From contig NEEC01000489.1 of assembly GCA_002189035.1 (NCBI GenBank), forward strand, positions 1 to 30,863: a DNA stretch of 30,863 nt, given 5' to 3'. A model generated the notes under the pieces. That model worked only from the letters and a program-made list of their open reading frames with translations, was not told the DNA's origin and made no database searches. The translations under genes were made by a program, and so were the position numbers. The stretch's first letter is position 1. Each line of letters begins with the position of its first letter. Shown in pieces: positions 1-30,863 of the stretch. The stretch is from Utricularia gibba (Eukaryota; Plantae; Magnoliophyta).

Positions 1-3000
1 ATCTGAAGGCTAATATAAGGCAATCTTTCGAGCATTTGTGCCTCCTCGGACGAACAAGTTCTCAACACGAAAGAAGACCGGCTCGGAACGAGCTTCGAAA
101 CGGTATGCTATGTGCAACATGACTCATCACATTTGCAAGATATCCACTCGATACCGAAGAGTGCACGAGGCCACCATGAGGTTGTGGCTAGGGACACACC
201 CATGGCATCTTAAATGATCATCTCGAAATCCAAATTTCACATCGTCCCATGAAATACATATGTCTTGCATGCCGAAAATCACATTCGCATCGAGTCGGGT
301 GTCCCGAGTCGCATCGTCGCGAACGTGGTGGCCACTTCGTTGCACATCTTAAGGCTAATATAAGGCAATCTTTCGAGCATTTGTGCCTCCTCGGACGAAC
401 AAGTTCTCAACACGAAAGAGACCGGCTCGGAACGAGCTTCGAAACGGTATGCTATGTGCAACATGACTCATCACCGTTTGCAAGATATCCACTCGATACC
501 GAAGAGTGCACGAGGCCACCATGAGGTTGTGGCTAGGGACACACCATGGCATCTTAAATGATCATCTCGAAATCCAAAATTTCACATCGTCCATGAAATA
601 CATATGTCTTGCATGCCGAAAATCACATTCGCATCGAGTCGGGTGTCCCGAGTCGCATCGTCGCGAACGTGGTGGCCACTTCGTTGCACATCTGAAGGCT
701 AATATAAGGCAATCTTTCGAGCATTTGTGCCTCCTCGACGAACAAGTTCTCAACACGAAAGAAGACCGGCTCGGAACGAGCTTCGAAACGGTATGCTATG
801 TGCAACATGACTCATCACCATTTGCAAGATATCCACTCGATACCGAAGAGTGCACGAGGCCACCATGAGGTTGTGGCTAGGGACACACCCATGGCATCTT
901 AAATGATCATCTCGAAATCCAAAAATTCACATCGTCCCATGAAATACATATGTCTTGCATGCCGAAAATCACATTCGCATCGAGTCGGGTGTCCCGAGTC
1001 GCATCGTCGCGAACGTGGTGGCCACTTCGTTGCACATCTTAAGGCTAATATAAGGCAATCTTTCGAGCATTTGTGCCTCCTCGGACGAACAAGTTCTCAA
1101 CACGAAAGAGACCGGCTCGGAACGAGCTTCGAAACGGTATGCTATGTGCAACATGACTCATCACCATTTGCAAGATATCCACTCGATACCGAAGAGTGCA
1201 CGAGGCCACCATGAGGTTGTGGCTAGGGACACACCATGGCATCTTAAATGATCATCTCGAAATCCAAAATTCACATCGTCCCATGAAATACATATGTCTT
1301 GCATGCAAAAATCACATTCGCATCGAGTCGGTGTCCCGAGTCGCATCGTCGCGAACGTGGTGGCCACTTCGTTGCACATCTGAAGGCTAATATAAGGCAA
1401 TCTTTCGAGCATTTGTGCCTCCTCGGACGAACAAGTTCTCAACACGAAAGAAGACCGGCTCGGAACGAGCTTCGAAACGGTATGCTATGTGCAACATGAC
1501 TCATCACCATTTGCAAGATATCCACTCGATACCGAAGAGTGCACGAGGCCACCATGAGGTTGTGGCTAGGGACACACCCATGGCATCTTAAATGATCATC
1601 TCGAAATCCAAATATTCACATCGTCCCATGAAATACATATGTCTTGCATGCCGAAAATCACATTCGCATCGAGTCGGGTGTCCCGAGTCGCATCGTCGCG
1701 AACGTGGTGGCCACTTCGTTGCACATCTGAAGGCTAATATAAGGCAATCTTTCGAGCATTTGTGCCTCTCGGACGAACAAGTTCTCAACACGAAAGAAAC
1801 GGCTCGGAACGAGCTTCGAAACGGTATGCTATGTGCAACATGACTCATCACCATTTGCAAGATATCCACTCGATACCGAAGAGTGCACGAGGCCACCATG
1901 AGGTTGTGGCTAGGGACACACCCATGGCATCTTAAATGATCATCTCGAAATCCAAAATTTTCACATCGTCCATGAAAATATGTCTTGCATGCCGAAAATC
2001 ACATTCGCATCGAGTCGGGTGTCCCGAGTCGCATCGTCGCGAACGTGGCCACTTCGTTGCACATCTAAGGCTAATATAAGGCAATCTTTCGAGCATTTGT
2101 GCCTCCTCGCGAACAAGTTCTCAACACGAAAGAGACCGGCTCGGAACGTATGTGCAACATGACTCATCACCGTTTGCAAGATATCCACTCGATACCGAAG
2201 AGTGCACGAGGCCACCATGAGGTTGTGGCTAGGGACACACCCATGGCATCTTAAATGATCATCTCGAAATCCAAAATTTCACATCGTCCCATGAAATACA
2301 TATGTCTTGCATGCCGAAAATCACATTCGCATCGAGTCGGGTGTCCCGAGTCGCATCGTCGCGAACGTGGTGGCCACTTCGTTGCACATCTGAAGGCTAA
2401 TATAAGGCAATCTTTCGAGCATTTGTGCCTCCTCGGACGAACAAGTTCTCAACACGAAAGAAGACCGGCTCGGAACGAGCTTCGAAACGGTATGCTATGT
2501 GCAACATGACTCATCACCGTTTGCAAGATATCCACTCGATACCGAAGAGTGCACGAGGCCACCATGAGGTTGTGGCTAGGGACACACCCATGGCATCTTA
2601 AATGATCATCTCGAAATAATTTCACATCGTCCCATGAAATACATATGTCTTGCATGCCGAAAATCACATTCGCATCGAGTCGGTGTCCCGAGTCGCATCG
2701 TCGCGAACGTGGTGGCCACTTCGTTGCACATCTGAAGGCTAATATAAGGCAATCTTTCGAGCATTTGTGCCTCCTCGGACGAACAAGTTCTCAACACGAA
2801 AGAAGACCGGCTCGGAACGAGCTTCGAAACGGTATGATATGCAACATGACTCATCACCATTTGCAAGATATCCACTCGATACCGAAGAGTGCACGAGGCC
2901 ACCATGAGGTTGTGGCTAGGGACACACCCATGGCATCTTAAATGATCATCTCGAAATCCAAATATTCACATCGTCCCATGAAATACATATGTCTTGCATG

Positions 3001-5648
3001 CCGAAAATCACATTCGCATCGAGTCGGGTGTCCCGAGTCGCATCGTCGCGAACGTGGTGGCCACTTCGTTGCACATCGGCTAATATAAGGCAATCTTTCG
3101 AGCATTTGTGCCTCCTCGGACGAACAAGTTCTCAACACGAAAGAAGACCGGCTCGGAACGAGCTTCGAAACGGTATGCTATGTGCAACATGACTCATCAC
3201 CGTTTGCAAGATATCCACTCGATACCGAAGAGTGCACGAGGCCACCATGAGGTTGTGGCTAGGGACACACCCATGGCATCTTAAATGATCATCTCGAAAT
3301 CCAAAATTCACATCGTCCCATGAAATACATATGTCTTGCATGCCGAAAATCACATTCGCATCGAGTCGGGTGTCCCGAGTCGCATCGTCGCGAACGTGTG
3401 GCCACTTCGTTGCACATCTTAAGGCTAATATAAGGCAATCTTTCGAGCATTTGTGCCTCCTCGGACGAACAAGTTCTCAACACGAAAGAAGACCGGCTCG
3501 GAACGAGCTTCGAAACGGTATGCTATGTGCAACATGACTCATCACCGTTTGCAAGATATCCACTCGATACCGAAGAGTGCACGAGGCCACCATGAGGTTG
3601 TGGCTAGGGACACACCCATGGCATCTTAAATGATCATCTCGAAATCCAAATATTCACATCGTCCCATGAAATACATATGTCTTGCATGCCGAAAATCACA
3701 TTCGCATCGAGTCGGGTGTCCCGAGTCGCATCGTCGCGAACGTGGTGGCCACTTCGTTGCACATCTGAAGGCTAATATAAGGCAATCTTTCGAGCATTTG
3801 TGCCTCCTCGGACGAACAAGTTCTCAACACGAAAGAAGACCGGCTCGGAACGAGCTTCGAAACGGTATGCTATGTGCAACATGACTCATCACCATTTGCA
3901 AGATATCCACTCGATACCGAAGAGTGCACGAGGCCACCATGAGGTTGTGGCTAGGGACACACCCATGCATCTTAAATGATCATCTCGAAATCCAAATATT
4001 CACATCGTCCCATGAAATACATATGTCTTGCATGCCGAAAATCACATTCGCATCGAGTCGGGTGTCCCGAGTCGCATCGTCGCGAACGTGTGGCCACTTC
4101 GTTGCACATCTGAAGGCTAATATAAGGCAATCTTTCGAGCATTTGTGCCCTCGGACGAACAAGTTCTCAACGAAAGAGACCGGCTCGGAACGCTCAACAT
4201 GACTCATCACCGTTTGCAAGATATCCACTCGATACCGAAGAGTGCACGAGGCCACCATGAGGTTGTGGCTAGGGACACACCCATGGCATCTTAAATGATC
4301 ATCTCGAAATCCAAATTTCACATCGTCCCATGAAATACATATGTCTTGCATGCCGAAAATCACATTCGCATCGAGTCGGGTGTCCCGAGTCGCATCGTCG
4401 CGAACGTGGTGGCCACTTCGTTGCACATCTGAAGGCTAATATAAGGCAATCTTTCGAGCATTTGTGCCTCCTCGGACGAACAAGTTCTCAACACGAAAGA
4501 AGACCGGCTCGGAACGAGCTTCGAAACGGTATGCTATGTGCAACATGACTCATCACCATTTGCAAGATATCCACTCGATACCGAAGAGTGCACGAGGCCA
4601 CCATGAGGTTGTGGCTAGGGACACACCCATGGCATCTTAAATGATCATCTCGAAATCCAAAATTCACATCGTCCCATGAAATACATATGTCTTGCATGCC
4701 GAAAATCACATTCGCATCGAGTCGGTGTCCCGAGTCGCATCGTCGCGAACGTGGTGGCCACTTCGTTGCACATCTGAAGGCTAATATAAGGCAATCTTTC
4801 GAGCATTTGTGCCTCCTCGGACGAACAAGTTCTCAACACGAAAGAGACCGGCTCGGATATGTGCAACATGACTCATCACCGTTTGCAAGATATCCACTCG
4901 ATACCGAAGAGTGCACGAGGCCACCATGAGGTTGTGGCTAGGGACACACCCATGGCATCTTAAATGATCATCTCGAAATCCAAATTCACATCGTCCCATG
5001 AAATACATATGTCTTGCATGCCGAAAATCACATTCGCATCGAGTCGGGTGTCCCGAGTCGCATCGTCGCGAACGTGGTGGCCACTTCGTTGCACATCTGA
5101 AGGCTAATATAAGGCAATCTTTCGAGCATTGTGCCTCCTCGGACGAACAAGTTCTCAACACGAAAGAAGACCGGCTCGGAACGAGCTTCGAAACGGTATG
5201 CTATGTGCAATGACTCATCACCATTTGCAAGATATCCACTCGATACCGAAGAGTGCACGAGGCCACCATGAGGTTGTGGCTAGGGACACACCCATGGCAT
5301 CTTAAATGATCATCTCGAAATCCAAATATTCACATCGTCCCATGAAATACATATGTCTTGCATGCCGAAAATCACATTCGCATCGAGTCGGGTGTCCCGA
5401 GTCGCATCGTCGCGAACGTGTGGCCACTTCGTTGCACATCTTAAGGCTAATATAAGGCAATCTTTCGAGCATTTGTGCCTCCTCGGACGAACAAGTTCTC
5501 AAACGAAAGAAGACCGGCTCGGAACGAGCTTCGAAACGGTATGCTATGTGCAACATGACTCATCACCGTTTGCAAGATATCCACTCGATACCGAAGAGTG
5601 CACGAGGCCACCATGAGGTTGTGGCTAGGGACACACCCATGGCATCTT

Positions 5649-5919
5649 AAATGATCATCTCGAAATCCAAATTTCACATCGTCCCATGAAATACATATGT
5701 CTTGCATGCCGAAAATCACATTCGCATCGAGTCGGGTGTCCCGAGTCGCATCGTCGCGAACGTGTGGCCACTTCGTTGCACATCTTAAGGCTAATATAAG
5801 GCAATCTTTCGAGCATTTGTGCCTCCTCGGACGAACAAGTTCTCAACACGAAAGGACCGGCTCGGAAAACATGGCGAAAACGAGTGCACATGACGTTGTG
5901 GACACACCCATGGCATCTT
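5649..5919 (+). repeat. Strongly shortened monomer U17 (271 bp)
   Basis: First ~205 bp match consensus; second half collapsed; GTTGTGG|ACACACC junction at 5895-5908. Partner is U61. Confidence 0.8.
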
Positions 5920-7633
5920 AAATGATCATCTCGAAATCCAAATATTCACATCGTCCCATGAAATACATATGTCTTGCATGCCGAAAATCACATTCGCATC
6001 GAGTCGGGTGTCCCGAGTCGCATCGTCGCGAACGTGTGGCCACTTCGTTGCACATCTTAAGGCTAATATAAGGCAATCTTTCGAGCATTTGTGCCTCCTC
6101 GGACGAACAAGTTCTCAACACGAAAAGACCGGCTCGGAACGAGCTTCGAAACGGTATGCTATGTGCAACATGACTCATCACCATTTGCAAGATATCCACT
6201 CGATACCGAAGAGTGCACGAGGCCACCATGAGGTTGTGGCTAGGGACACACCCATGGCATCTTAAATGATCATCTCGAAATCCAAATATTCACATCGTCC
6301 CATGAAATACATATGTCTTGCATGCCGAAAATCACATTCGCATCGAGTCGGGTGTCCCGAGTCGCATCGTCGCGAACGTGTGGCCACTTCGTTGCACATC
6401 TTAAGGCTAATATAAGGCAATCTTTCGAGCATTTGTGCCTCCTCGGACGAACAAGTTCTCAACACGAAAGAGACCGGCTCGGAACGAGCTTCGAAACGGT
6501 ATGCTATGTGCAACATGACTCATCACCATTTGCAAGATATCCACTCGATACCGAAGAGTGCACGAGGCCACCATGAGGTTGTGGCTAGGGACACACCCAT
6601 GGCATCTTAAATGATCATCTCGAAATCCAAATATTCACATCGTCCCATGAAATACATATGTCTTGCATGCCGAAAATCACATTCGCATCGAGTCGGGTGT
6701 CCCGAGTCGCATCGTCGCGAACGTGGTGGCCACTTCGTTGCACATCTGAAGGCTAATATAAGGCAATCTTTCGAGCATTTGTGCCTCCTCGGACTTCTCA
6801 ACACGAAAGAAGACCGGCTCGAACGAGCTTCGAAACGGTATGCTATGTGCAACATGACTCATCACCATTTGCAAGATATCCACTCGATACCGAAGAGTGC
6901 ACGAGGCCACCATGAGGTTGTGGCTAGGGACACACCCATGGCATCTTAAATGATCATCTCGAAATCCAAATTTTCACATCGTCCCATGAAATACATATGT
7001 CTTGCATGCAAAAATCACATTCGCATCGAGTCGGTGTCCCGAGTCGCATCGTCGCGAACGTGTGGCCACTTCGTTGCACATCTGAAGGCTAATATAAGGC
7101 AATCTTTCGAGCATTTGTGCCTCCTCGGACGAACAAGTTCTCAACAAAGAAGACCGGCTCGGAACGAGCTTCGAAACGGTATGATATGTGCAACATGACT
7201 CATCACCATTTGCAAGATATCCACTCGATACCGAAGAGTGCACGAGGCCACCATGAGGTTGTGGCTAGGGACACACCCATGGCATCTTAAATGATCATCT
7301 CGAAATCCAAATTTCACATCGTCCCATGAAATACATATGTCTTGCATGCCGAAAATCACATTCGCATCGAGTCGGGTGTCCCGAGTCGCATCGTCGCGAA
7401 CGTGTGGCCACTTCGTTGCACATCTTAAGGCTAATATAAGGCAATCTTTCGAGCATTTGTGCCTCCTCGGACGAACAAGTTCTCAACACGAAAGAAGACC
7501 GGCTCGGAACGAGCTTCGAAACGGTATGCTATGTGCAACATGACTCATCACCGTTTGCAAGATATCCACTCGATACCGAAGAGTGCACGAGCCCACCATG
7601 AGGTTGTGGCTAGGGACACACCCATGGCATCTT

Positions 7634-7928
7634 AAATGATCATCTCGAAATCCAAATTTCACATCGTCCATGAAATAATATGTCTTGCATGCCGAAAATC
7701 ACATTCGCATCGAGTCGGGTGTCCCGAGTCGCATCGTCGCGAACGTGTGGCCACTTCGTTGCACATCTTAAGGCTAATATAAGGCAATCTTTCGAGCATT
7801 TGTGCCTCCTCGACGAACAAGTTCTCAACACGAAAAAGAACGAGCTCGAACGCTATGTGCAACATGACTCATCACCATTTGCGCAAGAGTGCACGAGACC
7901 ATGGTTGTGGACACACCCATGGCATCTT
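7634..7928 (+). repeat. Strongly shortened monomer U23 (295 bp)
   Basis: Carries the GAACG|CTATG junction (7848-7857), loses the GATATC region, and has GTTGTGG|ACACACC (7904-7917). Partner is U67. Confidence 0.8.
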
Positions 7929-9655
7929 AAATGATCATCTCGAAATCCAAATATTCACATCGTCCCATGAAATACATATGTCTTGCATGCCGAAAATCAC
8001 ATTCGCATCGAGTCGGGTGTCCCGAGTCGCATCGTCGCGAACGTGTGGCCACTTCGTTGCACATCTTAAGGCTAATATAAGGCAATCTTTCGAGCATTTG
8101 TGCCTCCTCGGACGAACAAGTTCTCAACACGAAAGAAGACCGGCTCGGAACGAGCTTCGAAACGGTATGCTATGTGCAACATGACTCATCACCATTTGCA
8201 AGATATCCACTCGATACCGAAGAGTGCACGAGGCCACCATGAGGTTGTGGCTAGGGACACACCCATGGCATCTTAAATGATCATCTCGAAATCCAAATAT
8301 TCACATCGTCCCATGAAATACATATGTCTTGCATGCCGAAAATCACATTCGCATCGAGTCGGTGTCCCGAGTCGCATCGTCGCGAACGTGGTGGCCACTT
8401 CGTTGCACTTCTGAAGGCTAATATAAGGCAATCTTTCGAGCATTTGTGCCTCCTCGGACGAACAAGTTCTCAACACGAAAGAGACCGGCTCGGAACGAGC
8501 TTCGAAACGGTATGCTATGTGCAACATGACTCATCACCATTTGCAAGATATCCACTCGATACCGAAGAGTGCACGAGGCCACCATGAGGTTGTGGCTAGG
8601 GACACACCCATGGCATCTTAAATGATCATCTCGAAATCCAAATATTCACATCGTCCCATGAAATACATATGTCTTGCATGCCGAAAATCACATTCGCATC
8701 GAGTCGGGTGTCCCGAGTCGCATCGTCGCGAACGTGGTGGCCACTTCGTTGCACATCTGAAGGCTAATATAAGGCAATCTTTCGAGCATTTGTGCCTCCT
8801 CGGACGAACAAGTTCTCAACACGAAAGAAGACCGGCTCGGAACGAGCTTCGAAACGGTATGCTATGTGCAACATGACTCATCACCATTTGCAAGATATCC
8901 ACTCGATACCGAAGAGTGCACGAGGCCATGATGAGGTTGTGGCTAGGGACACACCCATGGCATCTTAAATGATCATCTCGAAATCCAAATTTCACATCGT
9001 CCCATGAAATAAATATGTCTTGCATGCAAAAATCACATTCGCATCGAGTCGGTGTCCCGAGTCGCATCGTCGCGAACGTGTGGCCACTTCGTTGCACATC
9101 TGAAGGCTAATATAAGGCAATCTTTCGAGCATTTGTGCCTCCTCGGACGAACAAGTTCTCAAAACGAAAAGAAGACCGGCTCGGAACGAGCTTCGAAACG
9201 GTATGCTATGTGCAACATGACTCATCACCATTTGCAAGATATCCACTCGATACCGAAGAGTGCACGAGGCACCATGAGGTTGTGGCTAGGGACACACCCA
9301 TGGCATCTTAAATGATCATCTCGAAATCCAAATATTCACATCGTCCCATGAAATACATATGTCTTGCATGCCGAAAATCACATTCGCATCGAGTCGGGTG
9401 TCCCGAGTCGCATCGTCGCGAACGTGTGGCCACTTCGTTGCACATCTTAAGGCTAATATAAGGCAATCTTTCGAGCATTTGTGCCTCCTCGGACGAACAA
9501 GTTCTCAACACGAAAGAAGACCGGCTCGGAACGAGCTTCGAAACGGTATGCTATGTGCAACATGACTCATCACCGTTTGCAAGATATCCACTCGATACCG
9601 AAGAGTGCACGAGGCCACCATGAGGTTGTGGCTAGGGACACACCCATGGCATCTT

Positions 9656-9917
9656 AAATGATCATCTCGAAATCCAAATTTCACATCGTCCCATGAAATA
9701 ATATGTCTTGCATGCCGAAAATCACATTCGCATCGAGTCGGGTGTCCCGAGTCGCATCGTCGCGAACGTGTGGCCACTTCGTTGCACATCTTAAGGCTAA
9801 TATAAGGCAATCTTTCGAGCATTTGTGCCTCCTCGGACGAACAAGTTCTCAACACGAAAGAGACTTAAACGCAATCTAGTGCACAGACCATGAGTTGTGG
9901 ACACACCATGGCATCTT
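9656..9917 (+). repeat. Strongly shortened monomer U29 (262 bp)
   Basis: Second half collapsed; GTTGTGG|ACACACC at 9894-9907. Partner is U73. Confidence 0.8.
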
Positions 9918-12900
9918 AAATGATCATCTCGAAATCCAAATATTCACATCGTCCCATGAAATACATATGTCTTGCATGCCGAAAATCACATTCGCATCGA
10001 GTCGGGTGTCCCGAGTCGCATCGTCGCGAACGTGTGGCCACTTCGTTGCACATCTTAAGGCTAATATAAGGCAATCTTTCGAGCATTTGTGCCTCCTCGG
10101 ACGAACAAGTTCTCAACACGAAAGAGACCGGCTCGGAACGAGCTTCGAAACGGTATGCTATGTGCAACATGACTCATCACCATTTGCAAGATATCCACTC
10201 GATACCGAAGAGTGCACGAGGCCACCATGAGGTTGTGGCTAGGGACACCCATGGCATCTTAAATGATCATCTCGAAATCCAAATATTCACATCGTCCCAT
10301 GAAATACATATGTCTTGCATGCCGAAAATCACATTCGCATCGAGTCGGTGTCCCGAGTCGCATCGTCGCGAACGTGGTGGCCACTTCGTTGCACATCTTA
10401 AGGCTAATATAAGGCAATCTTTCGAGCATTTGTGCCTCCTCGGACGAACAAGTTCTCAACACGAAAGAAGACCGGCTCGGAACGAGCTTCGAAACGGTAT
10501 GCTATGTGCAACATGACTCATCACCATTTGCAAGATATCCACTCGATACCGAAGAGTGCACGAGGCCACCATGAGGTTGTGGCTAGGGACACCCCATGGC
10601 ATCTTAAATGATCATCTCGAAATCCAAATATTCACATCGTCCCATGAAATACATATGTCTTGCATGCCGAAAATCACATTCGCATCGAGTCGGGTGTCCC
10701 GAGTCGCATCGTCGCGAACGTGGTGGCCACTTCGTTGCACATCTGAAGGCTAATATAAGGCAATCTTTCGAGCATTTGTGCCTCCTCGGACGAACAAGTT
10801 CTCAACACGAAAGAAGACCGGCTCGAACGAGCTTCGAAACGGTATGCTATGTGCAACATGACTCATCACCATTTGCAAGATATCCACTCGATACCGAAGA
10901 GTGCACGAGGCCACCATGAGGTTGTGGCTAGGGACACACCCATGGCATCTTAAATGATCATCTCGAAATCCAAATTTCACATCGTCCCATGAAATACATA
11001 TGTCTTGCATGCAAAAATCACATTCGCATCGAGTCGGGTGTCCCGAGTCGCATCGTCGCGAACGTGGTGGCCACTTCGTTGCACATCTGAAGGCTAATAT
11101 AAGGCAATCTTTCGAGCATTTGTGCCTCCTCGGACGAACAAGTTCTCAACACGAAAGAAGACCGGCTCGAACGCTTCGAAACGGTATGCTATGTGCAACA
11201 TGACTCATCACCATTTGCAAGATATCCACTCGATACCGAAGAGTGCACGAGGCCACCATGAGGTTGTGGCTAGGGACACACCCATGGCATCTTAAATGAT
11301 CATCTCGAAATCCAAATTTCACATCGTCCCATGAAATACATATGTCTTGCATGCCGAAAATCACATTCGCATCGAGTCGGGTGTCCCGAGTCGCATCGTC
11401 GCGAACGTGTGGCCACTTCGTTGCACATCTTAAGGCTAACAATCTTTCGAGCATTTGTGCCTCCTCTGCAAAAGACGGGTATCGGAACGAGCTTCGAAAC
11501 GGTATGCTATGTGCAACATGACTCATCACGTTTGCAAGATATCCACTCGATACCGAAGAGTGCACGAGGCCACCATGAGGTTGTGGCTAGGGACACACCC
11601 ATGGCATCTTAAATGATCATCTCGAAATCCAAATTTCACATCGTCCCATGAAATACATATGTCTTGCATGCCGAAAATCACATTCGCATCGAGTCGGGTG
11701 TCCCGAGTCGCATCGTCGCGAACGTGGTGGCCACTTCGTTGCACATCTGAAGGCTAATATAAGGCAATCTTTCGAGCATTTGTGCCTCCTCGGACGAACA
11801 AGTTCTCAACACGAAAGAAGACCGGCTCGAACGAGCTTCGAAACGGTATGCTATGTGCAACATGACTCATCACCATTTGCAAGATATCCACTCGATACCG
11901 AAGAGTGCACGAGGCCACCATGAGGTTGTGGCTAGGGACACACCCATGGCATCTTAAATGATATCTCGAAAAATTTCACATCGTCCCATGAAATACATAT
12001 GTCTTGCATGCGAAAATCACATTCGCATCGAGTCGGGTGTCCCGAGTCGCATCGTCGCGAACGTGTGGCCACTTCGTTGCACATCTTAAGGCTAATAAAG
12101 GCAATCTTTCGAGCATTTGTGCCTCCTCGGACGAACAAGTTCTCAACACGAAAGAGACCGGCTCGAACGCTATGTGCAACATGACTCATCACCGTTTGCA
12201 AGATATCCACTCGATACCGAAGAGTGCACGAGGCCACCATGAGGTTGTGGCTAGGGACACACCCATGGCATCTTAAATGATCATCTCGAAATCCAAATAT
12301 TCACATCGTCCCATGAAATACATATGTCTTGCATGCCGAAAATCACATTCGCATCGAGTCGGGTGTCCCGAGTCGCATCGTCGCGAACGTGTGGCCACTT
12401 CGTTGCACATCTTAAGGCTAATATAAGGCAATCTTTCGAGCATTTGTGCCTCCTCGGACGAACAAGTTCTCAACACGAAAGTAACCGGCTCGGAACGAGC
12501 TTCGAAACGGTATGCTATGTGCAACATGACTCATCACCATTTGCAAGATATCCACTCGATACCGAAGAGTGCACGAGGCCACCATGAGGGTTGTGGCTAG
12601 GGACACACCCATGGCATCTTAAATGATCATCTCGAAATCCAAATATTCACATCGTCCCATGAAATACATATGTCTTGCATGCCGAAAATCACATTCGCAT
12701 CGAGTCGGTGTCCCGAGTCGCATCGTCGCGAACGTGGTGGCCACTTCGTTGCACATCTGGGCTAATATAAGGCAATCTTTCGAGCATTTGTGCCTCCTCG
12801 GACGAACAAGTTCTCAACACGAAAGAAGACCGGCTCGGAACGAGCTTCGAAACGGTATGCTATGTGCAACATGACTCATCACCATTTGCAAGATATCCAC

Positions 12901-14291
12901 TCGATACCGAAGAGTGCACGAGGCCACCATGAGGTTGTGGCTAGGGACACACCCATGGCATCTTAAATGATCATCTCGAAATCCAAATATTCACATCGTC
13001 CCATGAAATACATATGTCTTGCATGCCGAAAATCACATTCGCATCGAGTCGGGTGTCCCGAGTCGCATCGTCGCGAACGTGGTGGCCACTTCGTTGCACA
13101 TCTGAAGGCTAATATAAGGCAATCTTTCGAGCATTTGTGCCTCCTCGGACGAACAAGTTCTCAACACGAAAGAAGACCGGCTCGAACGAGCTTCGAAACG
13201 GTATGCTATGTGCAACATGACTCATCACCATTTGCAAGATATCCACTCGATACCGAAGAGTGCACGAGGCCCACATGAGGTTGTGGCTAGGGACACACCC
13301 ATGGCATCTTAAATGATCATCTCGAAATCCAAATTTCACATCGTCCCATGAAATACATATGTCTTGCATGCGAAAATCACATTCGCATCGAGTCGGGTGT
13401 CCCGAGTCGCATCGTCCACTCGGCTAATTCTTTCGAGCAATGTTAACAAGCGAGCACACGAAAGAAAGAAGACGGCTCGGAACGAGCTTCGAAACGGTAT
13501 GATATGTGCAACATGACTCATCACCGTTTGCAAGATATCCACTCGATACCGAAGAGTGCACGAGGCCACCATGAGGTTGTGGCTAGGGACACACCATGGC
13601 ATCTTAAATGATCATCTCGAAATCCAAATTTCACATCGTCCCATGAAATACATATGTCTTGCATGCAAAAATCACATTCGCATCGAGTCGGGTGTCCCGA
13701 GTCGCATCGTCGCGAACGTGGTGGCCACTTCGTTGCACATCTGAAGGCTAATATAAGGCAATCTTTCGAGCATTTGTGCCTCCTCGGACGAACAAGTTCT
13801 CAACACGAAAGAAGACCGGCTCGAACGAGCTTCGAAACGGTATGCTATGTGCAACATGACTCATCACCATTTGCAAGATATCCACTCGATACCGAAGAGT
13901 GCACGAGGCCACCATGAGGTTGTGGCTAGGGACACACCATGGCATCTTAAATGATCATCTCGAAATCTGAAATTTCACATCGTCCATGAAATAATATGTC
14001 TTGCATGCCGAAAATCACATTCGCATCGAGTCGGTGTCCCGAGTCGCATCGTCGCGAACGTGGTGGCCACTTCGTTGCACATCTTAAGGCTAATATAAGG
14101 CAATCTTTCGAGCATTTGTGCCTCCTCGGACGAACAAGTTCTCAACACGAAAGAAGACCGGCTCGAACGAGCTTCGAAACGGTATGCTATGTGCAACATG
14201 ACTCATCACCATTTGCAAGATATCCACTCGATACCGAAGAGTGCACGAGGCCACCATGAGGTTGTGGCTAGGGACACACCCATGGCATCTT

Positions 14292-14619
14292 AAATGATCA
14301 TCTCGAAATCCAAATATTCACATCGTCCCATGAAATACATATGTCTTGCATGCCGAAAATCACATTCGCATCGAGTCGGGTGTCCCGAGTCGCATCGTCG
14401 CGAACGTTGTGGCCACTTCGTTGCACATCTTAAGGCTAATATAAGGCAATCTTTCGAGCATTTGTGCCTCCTCGGACGAACAAGTTCTCAACACGAAAGA
14501 GACCGGCTCGGAACGCTATGTGCAACATGACTCATCACCGTTTGCAAGATATCCACTCGATACGAAGAGTGCACGAGGCCACCATGAGGTTGTGGCTAGG
14601 GACACACCCATGGCATCTT
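14292..14619 (+). repeat. Example deletion-type (Y) monomer U43, 328 bp, lacking AGCTTCGAAACGGTATG
   Basis: Junction GAACG|CTATG at 14511-14520; the same junction recurs in several other short monomers. Confidence 0.8.
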
Positions 14620-17600
14620 AAATGATCATCTCGAAATCCAAATATTCACATCGTCCCATGAAATACATATGTCTTGCATGCCGAAAATCACATTCGCATC
14701 GAGTCGGGTGTCCCGAGTCGCATCGTCGCGAACGTGTGGCCACTTCGTTGCACATCTTAAGGCTAATATAAGGCAATCTTTCGAGCATTTGTGCCTCCTC
14801 GGACGAACAAGTTCTCAACACGAAAGAGACCGGCTCGGAACGAGCTTCGAAACGGTATGCTATGTGCAACATGACTCATCACCATTTGCAAGATATCCAC
14901 TCGATACCGAAGAGTGCACGAGGCCACCATGAGGTTGTGGCTAGGGACACACCATGGCATCTTAAATGATCATCTCGAAATCCAAATATTCACATCGTCC
15001 CATGAAATACATATGTCTTGCATGCCGAAAATCACATTCGCATCGAGTCGGTGTCCCGAGTCGCATCGTCGCGAACGTGGTGGCCACTTCGTTGCACATC
15101 TGAAGGCTAATATAAGGCAATCTTTCGAGCATTTGTGCCTCCTCGGACGAACAAGTTCTCAACACGAAAGTAGACCGGCTCGGAACGAGCTTCGAAACGG
15201 TATGCTATGTGCAACATGACTCATCACCATTTGCAAGATATCCACTCGATACCGAAGAGTGCACGAGGCCACCATGAGGTTGTGGCTAGGGACACACCCA
15301 TGGCATCTTAAATGATCATCTCGAATTCCAAATATTCACATCGTCCCATGAAATACATATGTCTTGCATGCCGAAAATCACATTCGCATCGAGTCGGGTG
15401 TCCCGAGTCGCATCGTCGCGAACGTGGTGGCCACTTCGTTGCACATCTGAAGGCTAATATAAGGCAATCTTTCGAGCATTTGTGCCTCCTCGGACGAACA
15501 AGTTCTCAACACGAAAGAAGACCGGCTCGGAACGAGCTTCGAAACGGTATGCTATGTGCAACATGACTCATCACCATTTGCAAGATATCCACTCGATACC
15601 GAAGAGTGCACGAGGCCACCATGAGGTTGTGGCTAGGGACACACCCATGGCATCTTAAATGATCATCTCGAAATCCAAATTTCACATCGTCCCATGAAAT
15701 ACATATGTCTTGCATGCAAAAATCACATTCGCATCGAGTCGGGTGTCCCGAGTCGCATCGTCGCGAACGTGGTGGCCACTTCGTTGCACATCTGAAGGCT
15801 AATATAAGGCAATCTTTCGAGCATTTGTGCCTCCTCGGACGAACAAGTTCTCAAACGAAAGAAGACCGGCTCGGAACGAGCTTCGAAACGGTATGCTATG
15901 TGCAACATGACTCATCACCATTTGCAAGATATCCACTCGATACCGAAGAGTGCACGAGGCCACCATGAGGTTGTGGCTAGGGACACACCCATGGCATCTT
16001 AAATGATCATCTCGAAATCCAAAATATTCACATCGTCCCATGAAATAATATGTCTTGCATGCCGAAAATCACATTCGCATCGAGTCGGGTTCCCGAGTCG
16101 CATCGTCGCGAACGTGGTGGCCACTTCGTTGCACATCTGAAGGCTAATATAAGGCAATCTTTCGAGCATTTGTGCCTCCTCGGACGAACAAGTTCTCAAC
16201 ACGAAAGAAGACCGGCTCGAACGAGCTTCGAAACGGTATGCTATGTGCAACATGACTCATCACCATTTGCAAGATATCCACTCGATACCGAAGAGTGCAC
16301 GAGGCCACCATGAGGTTGTGGCTAGGGACACACCCATGGCATCTTAAATGATCATCTCGAAATCCAAATATTCACATCGTCCCATGAAATACATATGTCT
16401 TGCATGCCGAAAATCACATTCGCATCGAGTCGGGTGTCCCGAGTCGCATCGTCGCGAACGTGGTGGCCACTTCGTTGCACATCTGAAGGCTAATATAAGG
16501 CAATCTTTCGAGCATTTGTGCCTCCTCGGACGAACAAGTTCTCAACACGAAAGAAGACCGGCTCGAACGAGCTTCGAAACGGTATGCTATGTGCAACATG
16601 ACTCATCACCATTTGCAAGATATCCACTCGATACCGAAGAGTGCACGAGGCCACCATGAGGTTGTGGCTAGGGACACACCCATGGCATCTTAAATGATCA
16701 TCTCGAAATCCAAATTTCACATCGTCCCATGAAATACATATGTCTTGCATGCCGAAAATCACATTCGCATCGAGTCGGGTGTCCCGAGTCGCATCGTCGC
16801 GAACGTGTGGCCACTTCGTTGCACATCTTAAGGCTAATATAAGGCAATCTTTCGAGCATTTGTGCCTCCTCGGACGAACAAGTTCTCAACACGAAAGAGA
16901 CCGGCTCGAAACGCTATGTGCAACATGACTCATCACCGTTTGCAAGATATCCACTCGATACCGAAGAGTGCACGAGGCCACCATGAGGTGTGGCTAGGGA
17001 CACACCCATGGCATCTTAAATGATCATCTCGAAATCCAAAATTTCACATCGTCCCATGAAATACATATGTCTTGCATGCCGAAAATCACATTCGCATCGA
17101 GTCGGGTGTCCCGAGTCGCATCGTCGCGAACGTGGTGGCCACTTCGTTGCACATCTGAAGGCTAATATAAGGCAATCTTTCGAGCATTTGTGCCTCCTCG
17201 GACGAACAAGTTCTCAACACGAAGAAGACCGGCTCGGAACGAGCTTCGAAACGGTATGCTATGTGCAACATGACTCATCACCATTTGCAAGATATCCACT
17301 CGATACCGAAGAGTGCACGAGGCCACCATGAGGTTGTGGCTAGGGACACACCCATGGCATCTTAAATGATCATCTCGAAATCCAAATTTCACATCGTCCC
17401 ATGAAATAAATATGTCTTGCATGCAAAAATCACATTCGCATCGAGTCGGTGTCCCGAGTCGCATCGTCGCGAACGTGTGGCCATTCGTTGCACATCTGAA
17501 GGCTAATATAAGGCAATCTTTCGAGCATTTGTGCCTCCTCGGACGAACAAGTTCTCAAACGAAAGAAGACCGGCTCGGAACGAGCTTCGAAACGGTATGC

Positions 17601-20425
17601 TATGTGCAACATGACTCATCACCGTTTGCAAGATATCCACTCGATACCGAAGAGTGCACGAGGCCACCATGAGGTTGTGGCTAGGGACACACCCATGGCA
17701 TCTTAAATGATCATCTCGAAATCCAAATATTCACATCGTCCCATGAAATACATATGTCTTGCATGCCGAAAATCACATTCGCATCGAGTCGGGTGTCCCG
17801 AGTCGCATCGTCGCGAACGTGTGGCCACTTCGTTGCACATCTTAAGGCTAATATAAGGCAATCTTTCGAGCATTTGTGCCTCCTCGGACGAACAAGTTCT
17901 CAACACGAAAGAGGCTCGGAACGAGCTTCGAAACGGTATGCTATGTGCAACATGACTCATCACCATTTGCAAGATATCCACTCGATACCGAAGAGTGCAC
18001 GAGGCCACCATGAGGTTGTGGCTAGGGACACACCCATGGCATCTTAAATGATCATCTCGAAATCCAAATATTCACATCGTCCCATGAAATACATATGTCT
18101 TGCATGCCGAAAATCACATTCGCATCGAGTCGGGTGTCCCGAGTCGCATCGTCGCGAACGTGTGGCCACTTCGTTGCACATCTTAAGGCTAATATAAGGC
18201 AATCTTTCGAGCATTTGTGCCTCCTCGGACGAACAAGTTCTCAACACGAAAGAAACCGGCTCGGAACGAGCTTCGAAACGGTATGCTATGTGCAACATGA
18301 CTCATCACCGTTTGCAAGATATCCACTCGATACCGAAGAGTGCACGAGGCCACCATGAGGTTGTGGCTAGGGACACACCCATGGCATCTTAAATGATCAT
18401 CTCGAAATCCAAATATTCACATCGTCCCATGAAATACATATGTCTTGCATGCCGAAAATCACATTCGCATCGAGTCGGGTGTCCCGAGTCGCATCGTCGC
18501 GAACGTGTGGCCACTTCGTTGCACATCTGAAGGCTAATATAAGGCAATCTTTCGAGCATTTGTGCCTCCTCGGACGAACAAGTTCTCAACACGAAAGAAG
18601 ACCGGCTCGAACGAGCTTCGAAACGGTATGCTATGTGCAACATGACTCATCACCATTTGCAAGATATCCACTCGATACCGAAGAGTGCACGAGGCCACCA
18701 TGAGGTTGTGGCTAGGGACACACCCATGGCATCTTAAATGATCATCTCGAAATCCAAATTTCACATCGTCCCATGAAATAATATGTCTTGCATGCGAAAA
18801 TCACATTCGCATCGAGTTGTCCCGAGTCGCATCGTCGCGAACGTGTGGCCACTTCGTTGCACATCTTAAGGCTAATATAAGGCAATCTTTCGAGCATTTG
18901 TGCCTCCTCGGACGAACAAGTTCTCAACACGAAAGAGACCCGGCTTCGAACGGTATGTGTGCAACATGACTCATCACCGTTTGCAAGATATCCACTCGAT
19001 ACCGAAGAGTGCACGAGGCCACCATGAGGTTGTGGCTAGGGACACACCCATGGCATCTTAAATGATCATCTCGAAATCCAAAATTTCACATCGTCCCATG
19101 AAATACATGTCTTGCATGCCGAAAATCACATTCGCATCGAGTCGGGTGTCCCGAGTCGCATCGTCGCGAACGTGGTGGCCACTTCGTTGCACATCTGAAG
19201 GCTAATATAAGGCAATCTTTCGAGCATTTGTGCCTCCTCGGACGAACAAGTTCTCAACACGAAAGAAGACCGGCTCGGAACGAGCTTCGAAACGGTATGC
19301 TATGTGCAACATGACTCATCACCATTTGCAAGATATCCACTCGATACCGAAGAGTGCACGAGGCCACCATGAGGTTGTGGCTAGGGACACACCCATGGCA
19401 TCTTAAATGATCATCTCGAAATCCAAATTTCACATCGTCCCATGAAATACATATGTCTTGCATGCCGAAAATCACATTCGCATCGAGTCGGTGTCCCGAG
19501 TCGCATCGTCGCGAACGTGGTGGCCACTTCGTTGCACATCTGAAGGCTAATATAAGGCAATCTTTCGAGCATTTGTGCCTCCTCGGACGAACAAGTTCTC
19601 AACACGAAAGAAGACCGGCTTCGAACGCTATGTGCAACATGACTCATCACCATTTGCAAGATATCCACTCGATACCGAAGAGTGCACGAGGCCACCATGA
19701 GGTTGTGGCTAGGGACACACCCATGGCATCTTAAATGATCATCTCGAAATCCAAAATTTCACATCGTCCCATGAAATACATATGTCTTGCATGCCGAAAA
19801 TCACATTCGCATCGAGTCGGGTGTCCCGAGTCGCATCGTCGCGAACGTGGTGGCCACTTCGTTGCACATCTGAAGGCTAATATAAGGCAATCTTTCGAGC
19901 ATTTGTGCCTCCTCGGACGAACAAGTTCTCAACACGAAAGAGACCGGCTCGGAACGAGCTTCGAAACGGTATGCTATGTGCAACATGACTCATCACCATT
20001 TTGCAAGATATCCACTCGATACCGAAGAGTGCACGAGGCCACCATGAGGTTGTGGCTAGGGACACACCCATGGCATCTTAAATGATCATCTCGAAATCCA
20101 AATATTCACATCGTCCCATGAAATACATATGTCTTGCATGCCGAAAATCACATTCGCATCGAGTCGGGTGTCCCGAGTCGCATCGTCGCGAACGTGTGGC
20201 CACTTCGTTGCACATCTTAAGGCTAATATAAGGCAATCTTTCGAGCATTTGTGCCTCCTCGGACGAACAAGTTCTCAACACGAAAGAAGACCGGCTCGGA
20301 ACGAGCTTCGAAACGGTATGCTATGTGCAACATGACTCATCACCGTTTGCAAGATATCCACTCGATACCGAAGAGTGCACGAGGCCACCATGAGGTTGTG
20401 GCTAGGGACACACCCATGGCATCTT

Positions 20426-20688
20426 AAATGATCATCTCGAAATCCAAATTTCACATCGTCCCATGAAATACATATGTCTTGCATGCCGAAAATCACATTC
20501 GCATCGAGTCGGGTGTCCCGAGTCGCATCGTCGCGAACGTGTGGCCACTTCGTTGCACATCTTAAGGCTAATATAAGGCAATCTTTCGAGCATTTGTGCC
20601 TCCTCGGACGAACAAGTTCTCAACACGAAAGTTCGGAACGAACATGAGCGAAAAAGTGCACAGGTTGTGGACACACCCATGGCATCTT
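20426..20688 (+). repeat. Strongly shortened monomer U61 (263 bp)
   Basis: Same collapse pattern as U17; GTTGTGG|ACACACC starting at 20664. Confidence 0.8.
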
Positions 20689-22070
20689 AAATGATCATCT
20701 CGAAATCCAAATATTCACATCGTCCCATGAAATACATATGTCTTGCATGCCGAAAATCACATTCGCATCGAGTCGGGTGTCCCGAGTCGCATCGTCGCGA
20801 ACGTGTGGCCACTTCGTTGCACATCTGAAGGCTAATATAAGGCAATCTTTCGAGCATTTGTGCCTCCTCGGACGAACAAGTTCTCAACACGAAAAAAGAC
20901 CGGCTCGGAACGAGCTTCGAAACGGTATGCTATGTGCAACATGACTCATCACCATTTGCAAGATATCCACTCGATACCGAAGAGTGCACGAGGCCACCAT
21001 GAGGTTGTGGCTAGGGACACACCCATGGCATCTTAAATGATCATCTCGAAATCCAAAATATTCACATCGTCCCATGAAATACATATGTCTTGCATGCCGA
21101 AAATCACATTCGCATCGAGTCGGTGTCCCGAGTCGCATCGTCGCGAACGTGGTGGCCACTTCGTTGCACATCTTAAGGCTAATATAAGGCAATCTTTCGA
21201 GCATTTGTGCCTCCTCGGACGAACAAGTTCTCAACACGAAAGAGACCGGCTCGGAACGAGCTTCGAAACGGTATGCTATGTGCAACATGACTCATCACCA
21301 TTTGCAAGATATCCACTCGATACCGAAGAGTGCACGAGGCCACCATGAGGTTGTGGCTAGGGACACACCCATGGCATCTTAAATGATCATCTCGAAATCC
21401 AAATTTCACATCGTCCCATGAAATACATATGTCTTGCATGCCGAAAATCACATTCGCATCGAGTCGGGTGTCCCGAGTCGCATCGTCGCGAACGTGGTGG
21501 CCACTTCGTTGCACATCTGAAGGCTAATATAAGGCAATCTTTCGAGCATTTGTGCCTCCTCGGACGAACAAGTTCTCAACACGAAAGAAGACCGGCTCGG
21601 AACGAGCTTCGAAACGGTATGCTATGTGCAACATGACTCATCACCATTTGCAAGATATCCACTCGATACCGAAGAGTGCACGAGGCCACCATGAGGTTGT
21701 GGCTAGGGACACACCCATGGCATCTTAAATGATCATCTCGAAATCCAAATTTCACATCGTCCCATGAAATACATATGTCTTGCATGCCGAAAATCACATT
21801 CGCATCGAGTCGGTGTCCCGAGTCGCATCGTCGCGAACGTGTGGCCACTTCGTTGCACATCTGAAGGCTAATATAAGGCAATCTTTCGAGCATTTGTGCC
21901 TCCTCGGACGAACAAGTTCTCAACACGAAAGAAGACCGGCTCGGAACGAGCTTCGAAACGGTATGCTATGTGCAACATGACTCATCACCATTTGCAAGAT
22001 ATCCACTCGATACCGAAGAGTGCACGAGGCCACCATGAGGTTGTGGCTAGGGACACACCCATGGCATCTT

Positions 22071-22417
22071 AAATGATCATCTCGAAATCCAAATATTCAC
22101 ATCGTCCCATGAAATACATATGTCTTGCATGCCGAAAATCACATTCGCATCGAGTCGGGTGTCCCGAGTCGCATCGTCGCGAACGTGGTGGCCACTTCGT
22201 TGCACATCTTAAGGCTAATATAAGGCAATCTTTCGAGCATTTGTGCCTCCTCGGACGAACAAGTTCTCAACACGAAAGAAGACCGGCTCGGAACGAGCTT
22301 CGAAACGGTATGCTATGTGCAACATGACTCATCACCATTTGCAAGATATCCACTCGATACCGAAGAGTGCACGAGGCCACCATGAGGTTGTGGCTAGGGA
22401 CACACCCATGGCATCTT
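22071..22417 (+). repeat. Reference full-length monomer U66 (347 bp; consensus except T at the G/T site, unit position 140)
   Basis: Runs AAATGATCATCTCGAAATCCAAATATTCAC...GGGACACACCCATGGCATCTT. Hand count on the consensus: 169/347 G+C and 25 CpG. Used as the coordinate reference: window position = 22070 + unit position. Confidence 0.93.
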
Positions 22418-22718
22418 AAATGATCATCTCGAAATCCAAATTTCACATCGTCCCATGAAATACATATGTCTTGCATGCCGAAAATCATTCGCATCGAGTC
22501 GGGTGTCCCGAGTCGCATCGTCGCGAACGTGGTGGCCACTTCGTTGCACATCTTAAGGCTAATATAAGGCAATCTTTCGAGCATTTGTGCCTCCTCGGAC
22601 GAACAAGTTCTCAACACGAAAGAGACCGGCTCGGAACGCTATGTGCAACATGACTCATCACCGTTTGCGAAAAGAGTGCACGAGGCCATGAGTTGTGGCT
22701 ACACACCCATGGCATCTT
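22418..22718 (+). repeat. Strongly shortened monomer U67 (301 bp)
   Basis: GAACG|CTATG at 22634-22643; reads TTTGCGAAAAGAGTGC in place of the GATATC region, similar to U23. Confidence 0.8.
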
Positions 22719-24434
22719 AAATGATCATCTCGAAATCCAAATATTCACATCGTCCCATGAAATACATATGTCTTGCATGCCGAAAATCACATTCGCATCG
22801 AGTCGGGTGTCCCGAGTCGCATCGTCGCGAACGTGGTGGCCACTTCGTTGCACATCTGAAGGCTAATATAAGGCAATCTTTCGAGCATTTGTGCCTCCTC
22901 GGACGAACAAGTTCTCAACACGAAAGAGACCGGCTCGGAACGAGCTTCGAAACGGTATGCTATGTGCAACATGACTCATCACCATTTGCAAGATATCCAC
23001 TCGATACCGAAGAGTGCACGAGGCCACCATGAGGTTGTGGCTAGGGACACACCCATGGCATCTTAAATGATCATCTCGAAATCCAAATATTCACATCGTC
23101 CCATGAAATACATATGTCTTGCATGCCGAAAATCACATTCGCATCGAGTCGGTGTCCCGAGTCGCATCGTCGCGAACGTGGTGGCCACTTCGTTGCACAT
23201 CTGAAGGCTAATATAAGGCAATCTTTCGAGCATTTGTGCCTCCGGACGAACAAGTTCTCAACACGAAAGAGACCGGCTCGGAACGAGCTTCGAAACGGTA
23301 TGCTATGTGCAACATGACTCATCACCATTTGCAAGATATCCACTCGATACCGAAGAGTGCACGAGGCCACCATGAGGTTGTGGCTAGGGACACACCCATG
23401 GCATCTTAAATGATCATCTCGAAATCCAAATTTCACATCGTCCCATGAAATACATATGTCTTGCATGCCGAAAATCACATTCGCATCGAGTCGGGTGTCC
23501 CGAGTCGCATCGTCGCGAACGTGGTGGCCACTTCGTTGCACATCTGAAGGCTAATATAAGGCAATCTTTCGAGCATTTGTGCCTCCTCGGACGAACAAGT
23601 TCTCAACACGAAAGAAGACCGGCTCGGAACGAGCTTCGAAACGGTATGCTATGTGCAACATGACTCATCACCATTTGCAAGATATCCACTCGATACCGAA
23701 GAGTGCACGAGGCCACCATGAGGTTGTGGCTAGGGACACACCCATGGCATCTTAAATGATCATCTCGAAATCCAAATTTCACATCGTCCCATGAAATACA
23801 TATGTCTTGCATGCAAAAATCACATTCGCATCGAGTCGGTGTCCCGAGTCGCATCGTCGCGAACGTGTGGCCACTTCGTTGCACATCTAAGGCTAATATA
23901 AGGCAATCTTTCGAGCATTTGTGCCTCCTCGGACGAACAAGTTCTCAAACGAAAGGGCTCGGAACGAGCTTCGAAACGGTATGCTATGTGCAACATGACT
24001 CATCACCATTTGCAAGATATCCACTCGATACCGAAGAGTGCACGAGGCCACCATGAGGTTGTGGCTAGGGACACACCCATGGCATCTTAAATGATCATCT
24101 CGAAATCCAAATATTCACATCGTCCCATGAAATACATATGTCTTGCATGCCGAAAATCACATTCGCATCGAGTCGGGTGTCCCGAGTCGCATCGTCGCGA
24201 ACGTGTGGCCACTTCGTTGCACATCTTAAGGCTAATATAAGGCAATCTTTCGAGCATTTGTGCCTCCTCGGACGAACAAGTTCTCAACACGAAAGAAGAC
24301 CGGCTCGGAACGAGCTTCGAAACGGTATGATATGTGCAACATGACTCATCACCGTTTGCAAGATATCCACTCGATACCGAAGAGTGCACGAGGCCACCAT
24401 GAGGTTGTGGCTAGGGACACACCCATGGCATCTT

Positions 24435-30700: not shown

Positions 30701-30863
30701 ACACGAAAGAAGACCGGCTCGAACGAGCTTCGAAACGGTATGCTATGTGCAACATGACTCATCACCATTTGCAAGATATCCACTCGATACCGAAGAGTGC
30801 ACGAGGCCACCATGAGGTTGTGGCTAGGGACACACCCATGGCATCTTAAATGATCATCTCGAA

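What the first reader, a model, noticed from the sequence alone, without database searches (positions are those of the whole stretch)
1934..17017. The 44-mer is nested: seven sub-blocks of 6,5,6,6,7,7,7 monomers, each led by a deletion-type monomer
Seen: deletion-type (Y) monomers fall at U6, 12, 17, 23, 29, 36, 43, then U50, 56, 61, 67, 73, 80, 87. After ten of them (U17, 23, 29, 36, 43, 61, 67, 73, 80, 87) the same order follows. Y+1 has AAATATT in 10/10 and GTGTGG in 9/10. Y+2 has the GG variant exactly in 8/10. Y+4 never has AAATATT, and shows GCATGCAAAAATC in 5 (U21, 27, 33, 47, 71) or another altered GCCGAAAA in 3 more. Inference: an older ~6-mer repeat expanded, gained or lost monomers by unequal exchange, and was then duplicated as a 44-mer, leaving a layered amplification record.
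Basis: partly seen in the sequence, partly recalled or inferred. Interest (0 to 1): 0.75.

Follow-up and report, generated by a model that had tools for sequence, protein, structure and literature searches.

The report
Nested repeat pattern in plant satellite
The window is one long run of a 346-base plant satellite whose copies sit in blocks of about six inside a 44-copy block present twice, an ordinary layered pattern left by repeated duplication, read here from noisy sequence.

Summary
The window is 91 full monomers of a ~346-bp, 49% GC satellite of a plant.

Monomer make-up depends on distance from the leading Y monomer. For the five regular cassette classes z is about 6 (p=0.0002), and for all seven z is about 3 (p=0.004). 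Lags 6 and 7 are both significant.

The archetype is a 6-mer: Y, T1, T2, T3, K, P. Blocks of 5 or 7 differ from it by single monomers gained or lost at different places.

- An added layer: the Y monomers of blocks C, D and E share further deletions.

Caveats:
- Only two copies of the 44-mer are visible.
- Lag-44 partners (1.2% different) are no closer than same-position monomers of different blocks (1.2%). The order of events therefore rests on structural markers, not on graded divergence.
- The sequence is noisy, so an assembly duplication is not excluded.

This is a nested ("cascading") higher-order repeat, a known kind. The scan noted nested repeats of this satellite on another piece of this genome. 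Interest is low.

The parts
1..30863 (+). Uninterrupted tandem array of a ~346-bp satellite: 91 full monomers U1-U91 plus partial monomers at both ends. GC is 0.48-0.49 throughout.
   Evidence: TRF periods 343-346 across the whole window. Flat composition. Anchor segmentation. Consensus of 346 bp.
1928..16685 (+). First copy of the 44-monomer unit (U6-U49). Blocks: A 1928-3967 (6 monomers), B 3968-5642 (5), C 5643-7627 (6), D 7628-9649 (6), E 9650-11949 (7), F 11950-14285 (7), G 14286-16685 (7).
   Evidence: Positions of Y monomers. Lag-44 minimum. Block-by-block lag-44 distances.
16686..30863 (+). Second copy of the 44-monomer unit (U50-U91, cut by the window end). Blocks: A' 16686, B' 18730, C' 20420, D' 22412, E' 24429, F' 26768, G' 29140 (truncated).
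   Evidence: The same series of short monomers 44 units later, phi 0.94. Pairwise alignments of homologous deletion monomers.
14286..14613 (+). U43, an example of a simple Y monomer: 17-bp deletion at consensus 230-246, joined to the GTGTGG position, T148, delA218 and G277. Other simple Y monomers are U6, 12, 14, 36, 50, 56, 58, 80 and 87.
   Evidence: The exact junction is shared by U43, U67 and U87. Junction letters vary in the others.
5643..5913 (+). U17, a complex Y monomer (271 bp). U17/U61, U23/U67 (7628-7922) and U29/U73 (9650-9911) add a deletion at consensus ~277-297 and loss of CTAGGG at 327-332. These mark blocks C, D and E as one sub-family.
   Evidence: The exact 6-bp-deletion junction occurs only in U17, 23, 29, 61 and 73. 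The intact 277-297 stretch is missing in U17, 23, 29, 61, 67 and 73.
4633..4955 (+).
11288..11604 (+). U34 (partner U78, 26105-26420): a different deletion at consensus ~181-213, specific to block E.
   Evidence: The lag-44 partner is among the two nearest monomers.
13305..13599 (+). U40 (partner U84, 28131-28451): a heavily rearranged or deleted monomer (consensus ~113-204). It is the extra monomer of block F.
206..1927 (+). U1-U5 upstream of the first 44-mer. They fit U44-U48 at lag 43 better than at lag 44. The partial monomer before them (1-205) lacks the Y deletion. This is therefore not a clean third copy.

Best explanation
This is non-coding plant satellite DNA with a nested (cascading) higher-order repeat.

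An ancestral block of six monomer variants was amplified in tandem. Its order was:
- Y, with a 17-bp deletion;
- T1, with AAATATT, GTGTGG, T148 and delA218;
- T2, with AAATATT and GG;
- T3, with AAATATT;
- K, with GCAAAAA;
- P, with GTGTGG, T148 and G277.

One lineage of the block acquired further deletions in its Y monomer and gave blocks C, D and E. Individual blocks then gained or lost single whole monomers, giving lengths of 5 to 7. Finally a 44-monomer (~14.8 kb) segment of seven blocks was duplicated in tandem.

The events are whole-monomer, in-register duplications and deletions. They are of the kind produced by unequal sister-chromatid exchange or other homology-directed repair. Later allele flips at a dozen recurrent sites come either from non-allelic gene conversion or from consensus noise.

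Shown: the periodicities, the shared order and the block-specific markers. Inferred: the mechanism and the order of events.
For: - The whole window is a 343-346-bp tandem array.
- Distance minima lie at lag 44, 6, 50, 38 and 7. Lags 6 and 7 are significant against shuffled order.
- Position in the block predicts monomer make-up. Blocks C-G give z=5.8 to 6.4. Each 44-mer copy alone gives z=6.6 and z=3.0. All seven classes give z=3.1 to 3.2.
- Single sites are tied to offset, for example AAATATT p=0.001, the K site p=0.0007 and GTGTGG p=0.004.
- Block alignment shows that C and D are collinear, E, F and G each have a different extra monomer, and B lacks K.
- Block-specific deletions recur exactly 44 monomers later.
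- There is no ORF, Rfam family or internal half-repeat, so the sequence is plain satellite.
- Kilobase indels of whole repeat units and local gene conversion are the measured mutation spectrum of Arabidopsis centromere satellites (bioRxiv 10.1101/2025.06.02.657473).
- Higher-order units with repeated monomer types arranged in rows are described in primates (PMC11050224 and PMC12428378).
Against: - Full-length lag-44 homologues differ by 1.18%. That equals the 1.24% between same-offset monomers of different blocks, and is only a little below the 1.66% at different offsets. Divergence therefore gives no time order.
- Monomer types differ by only about two sites.
- Half of the differences between the two 44-mer copies are flips at 12 recurrent sites, and 38% are private and mostly 1-bp deletions. 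This is what a noisy long-read consensus would also give.
- Deletion monomers differ by 3.9-8.9% between the two copies, and their junction letters vary.
- Only 2.0 copies of the 44-mer are visible, and the left flank does not continue it cleanly.
- Blocks A and B alone show no significant order.
- No independent reads confirm the long-range structure.
Confidence: 0.75

Rival explanations
1. The 6-7-monomer blocks are real, but the 44-monomer layer is an assembly artefact. One ~15-kb stretch would have been laid down twice from noisy long reads, or the consensus would have been mixed by reads recruited from neighbouring monomers.
For: - Differences between the two copies are mostly 1-bp deletions and flips at recurrent sites.
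- Lag-44 partners are no closer than same-offset monomers of other blocks.
- Rare-variant (deletion) monomers are the messiest, at 3.9-8.9%.
- The best public run holds only 34% of the sampled 31-mers.
- Only two copies are seen.
Against: - The copies differ by changes that are not typical read noise. U8 is an ordinary monomer while U52 is a full K-type monomer carrying five linked variants. U29 is 262 bp against 294 bp for U73, and U40 is 295 bp against 321 bp for U84.
- The delG229 variant is common in U20-U55 and nearly absent afterwards.
- A doubled read overlap would normally be collapsed by an assembler.
Confidence: 0.15
2. There is no true nested structure. The pattern comes from sequencing noise plus the reader's after-the-fact choice of ten of fourteen blocks and of particular sites.
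For: - With all columns and the messy short monomers included, the test is weak (p=0.04 for C-G, p=0.20 for all).
- Blocks A and B alone are not significant.
- Average-linkage clustering gives no discrete monomer clades.
Against: - With all seven classes and no site selection, full-length monomers still give z=3.07, p=0.004.
- Each 44-mer copy is significant on its own.
- Lag 6 and lag 7 are significant without any reference to Y.
- Substitutions (T148, G277, the K site) take part, not only homopolymer indels.
Confidence: 0.03
3. The regular spacing of deletion-type monomers every ~2.1-2.4 kb is maintained by function, for example chromatin phasing or centromere protein loading. On this reading it is not a passive record of duplications.
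For: Y monomers recur every 5-7 units through the whole 29 kb. Nothing else supports this reading.
Against: - Y monomers are the most degraded and variable units, with different extra deletions and variable junctions.
- An additional Y lies only two units after U12 and U56.
- Another array of the same satellite is noted with other periods, 5, 13 and 17 (unchecked note).
- No conserved motif or structure was found.
Confidence: 0.04

Closest known systems
Cascading higher-order repeats and superHORs of primate alpha satellite (Gluncic et al., PMC11050224; PMC12428378)
   Same: A long higher-order unit (15- to 58-mer there, 44-mer here) holds several monomers of the same type. It can be written as rows or sub-fragments of unequal length that repeat one order of types.
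   Different: - Alpha-satellite monomers are 171 bp and differ by tens of percent within a unit, and units recur tens to hundreds of times at under 1% divergence.
- Here the monomers are 346 bp and about 98% alike, and types differ by about two sites.
- Only two units are seen, and they are not measurably closer than the rows are to each other.
Plant centromeric satellite arrays shaped by whole-unit indels and local gene conversion (Arabidopsis CEN178; bioRxiv 10.1101/2025.06.02.657473)
   Same: Changes add or remove complete repeat units in register. Point differences are largely allele exchanges between nearby units. Both features match the block-length changes and the flips at recurrent sites seen here.
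   Different: - The satellite family and monomer length are different.
- The chromosomal position and CENH3 association of this array are unknown.
- Mutation events were not observed here, only inferred.
Other nested arrays noted by this scan in the same genome (346-bp satellite with 5-, 13- and 17-monomer periods; 157/313-bp satellite families)
   Same: It is the same genome and, for the first, apparently the same monomer length. These notes also describe nested periodicities.
   Different: These are unchecked first-reader notes on other DNA with other periods. I could not read those sequences, so family identity was not tested.

Membership tests
Satellite DNA (tandem repeat array) | Long head-to-tail array of one non-coding monomer | tested here: met
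   91 monomers of 343-347 bp fill the window. No long ORF and no Rfam family.
Higher-order repeat (classical, Willard type) | Similarity peaks at a multi-monomer period | tested here: met
   Lag 44 is the global minimum: 2.03% against about 3.25% on all columns, and 0.206 against about 0.31 on informative sites. The short-monomer pattern has phi 0.94.
Higher-order repeat (classical, Willard type) | Copies of the unit are much more alike than monomers within a unit | tested here: inconclusive
   Full-length lag-44 pairs differ by 1.18% and different-offset pairs by 1.66%. The contrast is small and close to the apparent noise floor.
Higher-order repeat (classical, Willard type) | Many tandem copies of the unit | tested here: not met
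   Only 2.0 copies lie in the window, and the five monomers upstream do not continue the period cleanly. The array beyond the window is unknown.
Cascading / nested higher-order repeat | The unit contains repeated monomer types arranged in rows that share one order | tested here: met
   Permutation tests give z=5.8 to 6.4 for five classes and z=3.1 to 3.2 for all seven. Supported also by the per-site table and the block alignment.
Centromeric satellite | Association with CENH3 chromatin or a cytological centromere position | not testable with these tools
   No chromosome context and no ChIP data are available. The window is satellite from end to end.

The most novel reading that the evidence does not exclude
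The array may be a readable, multi-step pedigree of a plant satellite: a 6-mer, then a C-D-E sub-family, then single-monomer gains and losses, then a 44-mer. Its steps could be ordered and, with accurate reads from several individuals, dated. This would give direct rates of whole-unit duplication against gene conversion outside Arabidopsis. The regular ~2-kb spacing of deletion monomers could also have a chromatin role.
Probability: 0.07. Interest if true: 0.45.

Novelty: new member of a known kind. Interest (0 to 1): 0.25.

Why it matters
Nested higher-order structure is how satellite arrays record their own amplification history. It is well documented in primates and is being documented in plants.

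This array is a tidy small example in a very homogeneous 346-bp plant satellite. It could serve as a test case for whole-unit indel and gene-conversion models if accurate reads were available.

In itself it changes no current view, and the base-level detail of this assembly is too noisy for fine inference.

Tried and rejected
- Rfam scan of 4 kb at a permissive threshold found nothing, so no ribozyme or RNA family is present.
- ORF scan found only short frames of at most 156 aa with no periodic open frame.
- Internal half-repeats and inverted repeats in the consensus were no better than shuffles.
- I laid contigs of four public runs on 5298-11287, 5,990 letters. Only 60-136-bp unitigs were placed, and most fit several places. 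They cannot confirm or refute deletions or long-range order. They do show that the AAAATTT form is very abundant at position 6971.
- The run search returned coded organism names, with a best share of 0.34 of the sampled words.
- Two exact-pattern scans of metagenome contigs with conserved 32- and 20-base motifs found nothing.
- Average-linkage clustering put 81 of 91 monomers in one cluster. The adjusted mutual information was still p=0.004-0.018 for blocks C-G.
- An ML tree was not built, because most markers are 1-bp indels that such a tree ignores.
- The raw distance that includes the messy short monomers blurs the signal.
Full report
**What is there.**
- Tandem Repeats Finder reports periods of 343-346 bp over the entire 30,863-base window, and base composition is flat at 48-49% GC.
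- Cutting the sequence at a conserved anchor gives 92 anchors, that is 91 complete monomers plus a partial one at each end.
U6 starts at 1928, U50 at 16686 and U51 at 17012, so the stated interval 1934-17017 is U6 to U50.
- The consensus monomer is 346 bp. It has no internal half-repeat or inverted repeat beyond what shuffles give, no long ORF and no Rfam match.
- Earlier notes of this scan say the genome is a plant's. The public runs that hold parts of the sequence have coded names. I could not name the species or the satellite family.

**The observation.**
- Twenty-one monomers are shorter than 338 bp: U6, 12, 14, 17, 23, 29, 34, 36, 40, 43, then U50, 56, 58, 61, 67, 73, 78, 80, 84, 87, plus U71. 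The short/long pattern repeats at lag 44 with phi 0.94.
Y is a deletion of about 17 bases at consensus 230-246, linked to GTGTGG, T148, delA218 and G277.
After the ten chosen Y monomers, Y+1 has AAATATT in 10/10 and GTGTGG in 9/10. Y+2 has the GG form in 8/10. Y+4 never has AAATATT, has the GCAAAAA form in five, and has another change at that site in three.
- Two corrections apply. U14 and U58 carry the same Y deletion and were not listed. Two further pairs, U34/78 and U40/84, carry other deletions inside blocks.

**Is it more than chance?**
- Mean distance between monomers is about 3.25% at most lags. It falls to 2.03% at lag 44, 2.60% at lag 6, 2.64% at lag 50, 2.77% at lag 38 and 3.01% at lag 7.
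- I shuffled the order of the 44 positions, applying the same shuffle to both copies so that the duplication is not counted twice. This gives z=-4.0 for lag 6 and z=-3.4 for lag 7.
- I also permuted positions within each block, again with the same permutation for lag-44 homologues. Monomers at the same distance from Y in different blocks are then significantly more alike than monomers at different distances.
  - On the 16 recurrent variant columns, blocks C-G give z=5.8 (p=0.0002), the first 44-mer alone z=6.6, the second alone z=3.0, and all seven classes z=3.2 (p=0.004).
  - On all columns of full-length monomers, with no site selection, z is 6.4 for C-G and 3.1 for all classes.
- The test is weak only when the heavily deleted, badly aligned monomers are included in the raw distance.
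- Blocks A and B on their own are not significant. Even so, Y+2 has the GG form in 4/4 and Y+4 the P-type combination in 4/4 there.

**Anatomy.**
- The archetype block is Y, T1, T2, T3, K, P:
  - T1 has AAATATT, GTGTGG, T148 and delA218.
  - T2 has AAATATT and GG.
  - T3 has AAATATT, sometimes with delG229.
  - K has GCAAAAA, often with GG and GTGTGG.
  - P has GTGTGG, T148 and G277.
- I aligned blocks as strings of monomers:
  - C and D are collinear 6-mers.
  - E has one extra monomer at its end (U35).
  - F has an extra rearranged monomer in the middle (U40).
  - G has an extra T3-like monomer (U48).
  - B lacks K.
  - A lacks K and has an extra terminal monomer.
- The length changes are therefore independent events that each involve one whole monomer.
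- The Y monomers of C, D and E (U17, 23, 29 and their partners U61, 67, 73) share a second deletion at about 277-297 and the loss of CTAGGG at 327-332. No other monomer has these.

**Order of events and its limits.**
- The argument that the 44-mer was copied last rests on structural markers. Each block's private features reappear 44 monomers later.
- Base-level divergence does not add to this. Among full-length monomers, lag-44 homologues differ by 1.18%, same-offset monomers of different blocks by 1.24% (1.08% within C-D-E) and different offsets by 1.66%.
- There is a floor near 1.1%. Of the 191 differing columns between homologues, 95 lie at 12 recurrent sites and 73 are private. Private changes are mostly one-base deletions.
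- Deletion monomers are far more different between the two copies (3.9-8.9%), and their junction letters vary.
- These features fit a noisy long-read consensus in which rare variants are disturbed by reads from neighbouring monomers. The recurrent-site flips equally fit non-allelic gene conversion, which dominates point change in Arabidopsis centromere arrays. I cannot separate the two.
- Only two copies of the 44-mer are visible. U1-U5 match U44-U48 at lag 43 rather than lag 44, and the partial monomer before them has no Y deletion.
- Some differences between the copies are not noise-like. U52 is a complete K-type monomer with five linked variants where U8 is ordinary. U29 is 262 bp against 294 bp for U73, and U40 is 295 bp against 321 bp for U84. 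The delG229 variant is confined largely to U20-U55. These argue against a trivial double lay-down, but an assembly artefact keeps about 15% in my estimate.

**Mechanism.** The most likely history is in-register whole-monomer duplication and deletion by unequal exchange or related homology-directed repair, acting at three or four successive scales. This was followed by local conversion or noise. The mechanism is inferred from the products. It agrees with the measured spectrum of kilobase indels of complete units in Arabidopsis and with the general models reviewed in PMC8122249.

**Comparison with what is known.**
- A long unit made of rows that repeat one order of monomer types is what Gluncic and colleagues call a cascading higher-order repeat. 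Examples are 15-mers with 4-, 7- and 11-monomer sub-fragments on human chromosome 15, and a 58-mer superHOR in five rows on the orangutan Y.
- The present array works like these. It differs in three ways: a 346-bp monomer, very low divergence between monomer types (about two sites), and only two visible units.
- It meets the period criterion of a classical higher-order repeat. It meets only marginally the criterion that units be more alike than their monomers, and it does not meet the many-copies criterion within the window.
- First-reader notes of this scan report nested periodicities in a 346-bp satellite on another piece of this genome and in its 157/313-bp satellites. The phenomenon therefore seems usual for this plant. 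These notes are unchecked.

**Verdict.** It is a new example of a known kind and of low general interest.

Noticed in passing
window 2594-2933 (U8) versus 17358-17698 (U52): The lag-44 partners are of different types. U52 is a full K-type monomer (A54, GCAAAAA, GG, GTGTGG, A209, G277), like U27 and U71. U8 has only the GG form. Either the monomer was replaced or converted after the 44-mer was copied, or the assembly is wrong here.
   Followed up: partly
window 6603-18729 (U20-U55): The one-base deletion delG229 occurs in U20, 29, 32, 35, 39, 41, 42, 48, 49 and 55 but in only two later monomers (U73, U91). It shows no lag-44 concordance (phi -0.01) but does show lag-7 concordance (+0.34). It is a regional variant, or a region-specific consensus error.
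   Followed up: partly
Y monomers, e.g. window 1928-2246, 16686-17011, 26768-27094: The letters at the junction of the 17-bp Y deletion differ between copies, and only U43, U67 and U87 share the exact junction. Deletion-bearing monomers differ 3.9-8.9% from their lag-44 partners, against about 1.2% for ordinary monomers. This suggests the consensus is disturbed at rare variants.
   Followed up: partly
window 6971 (U21): Short-read contigs of all four public runs read A where the window has T, which gives the AAAATTT form at very high depth (about 335,000 in run X1). That form is therefore abundant in the species, although it occurs in only 13 of the 91 monomers here.
   Followed up: no
window 206-1927 (U1-U5) and 1-205: The monomers upstream of the first 44-mer match U44-U48 at lag 43 rather than lag 44. 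The preceding partial monomer lacks the Y deletion. This could be a third, altered copy of block G, or the edge of the duplicated segment.
   Followed up: partly
window 23748-24082 (U71): This K-type monomer is 335 bp, with a small extra deletion at consensus ~214-219 that is not shared by its lag-44 partner U27.
   Followed up: no
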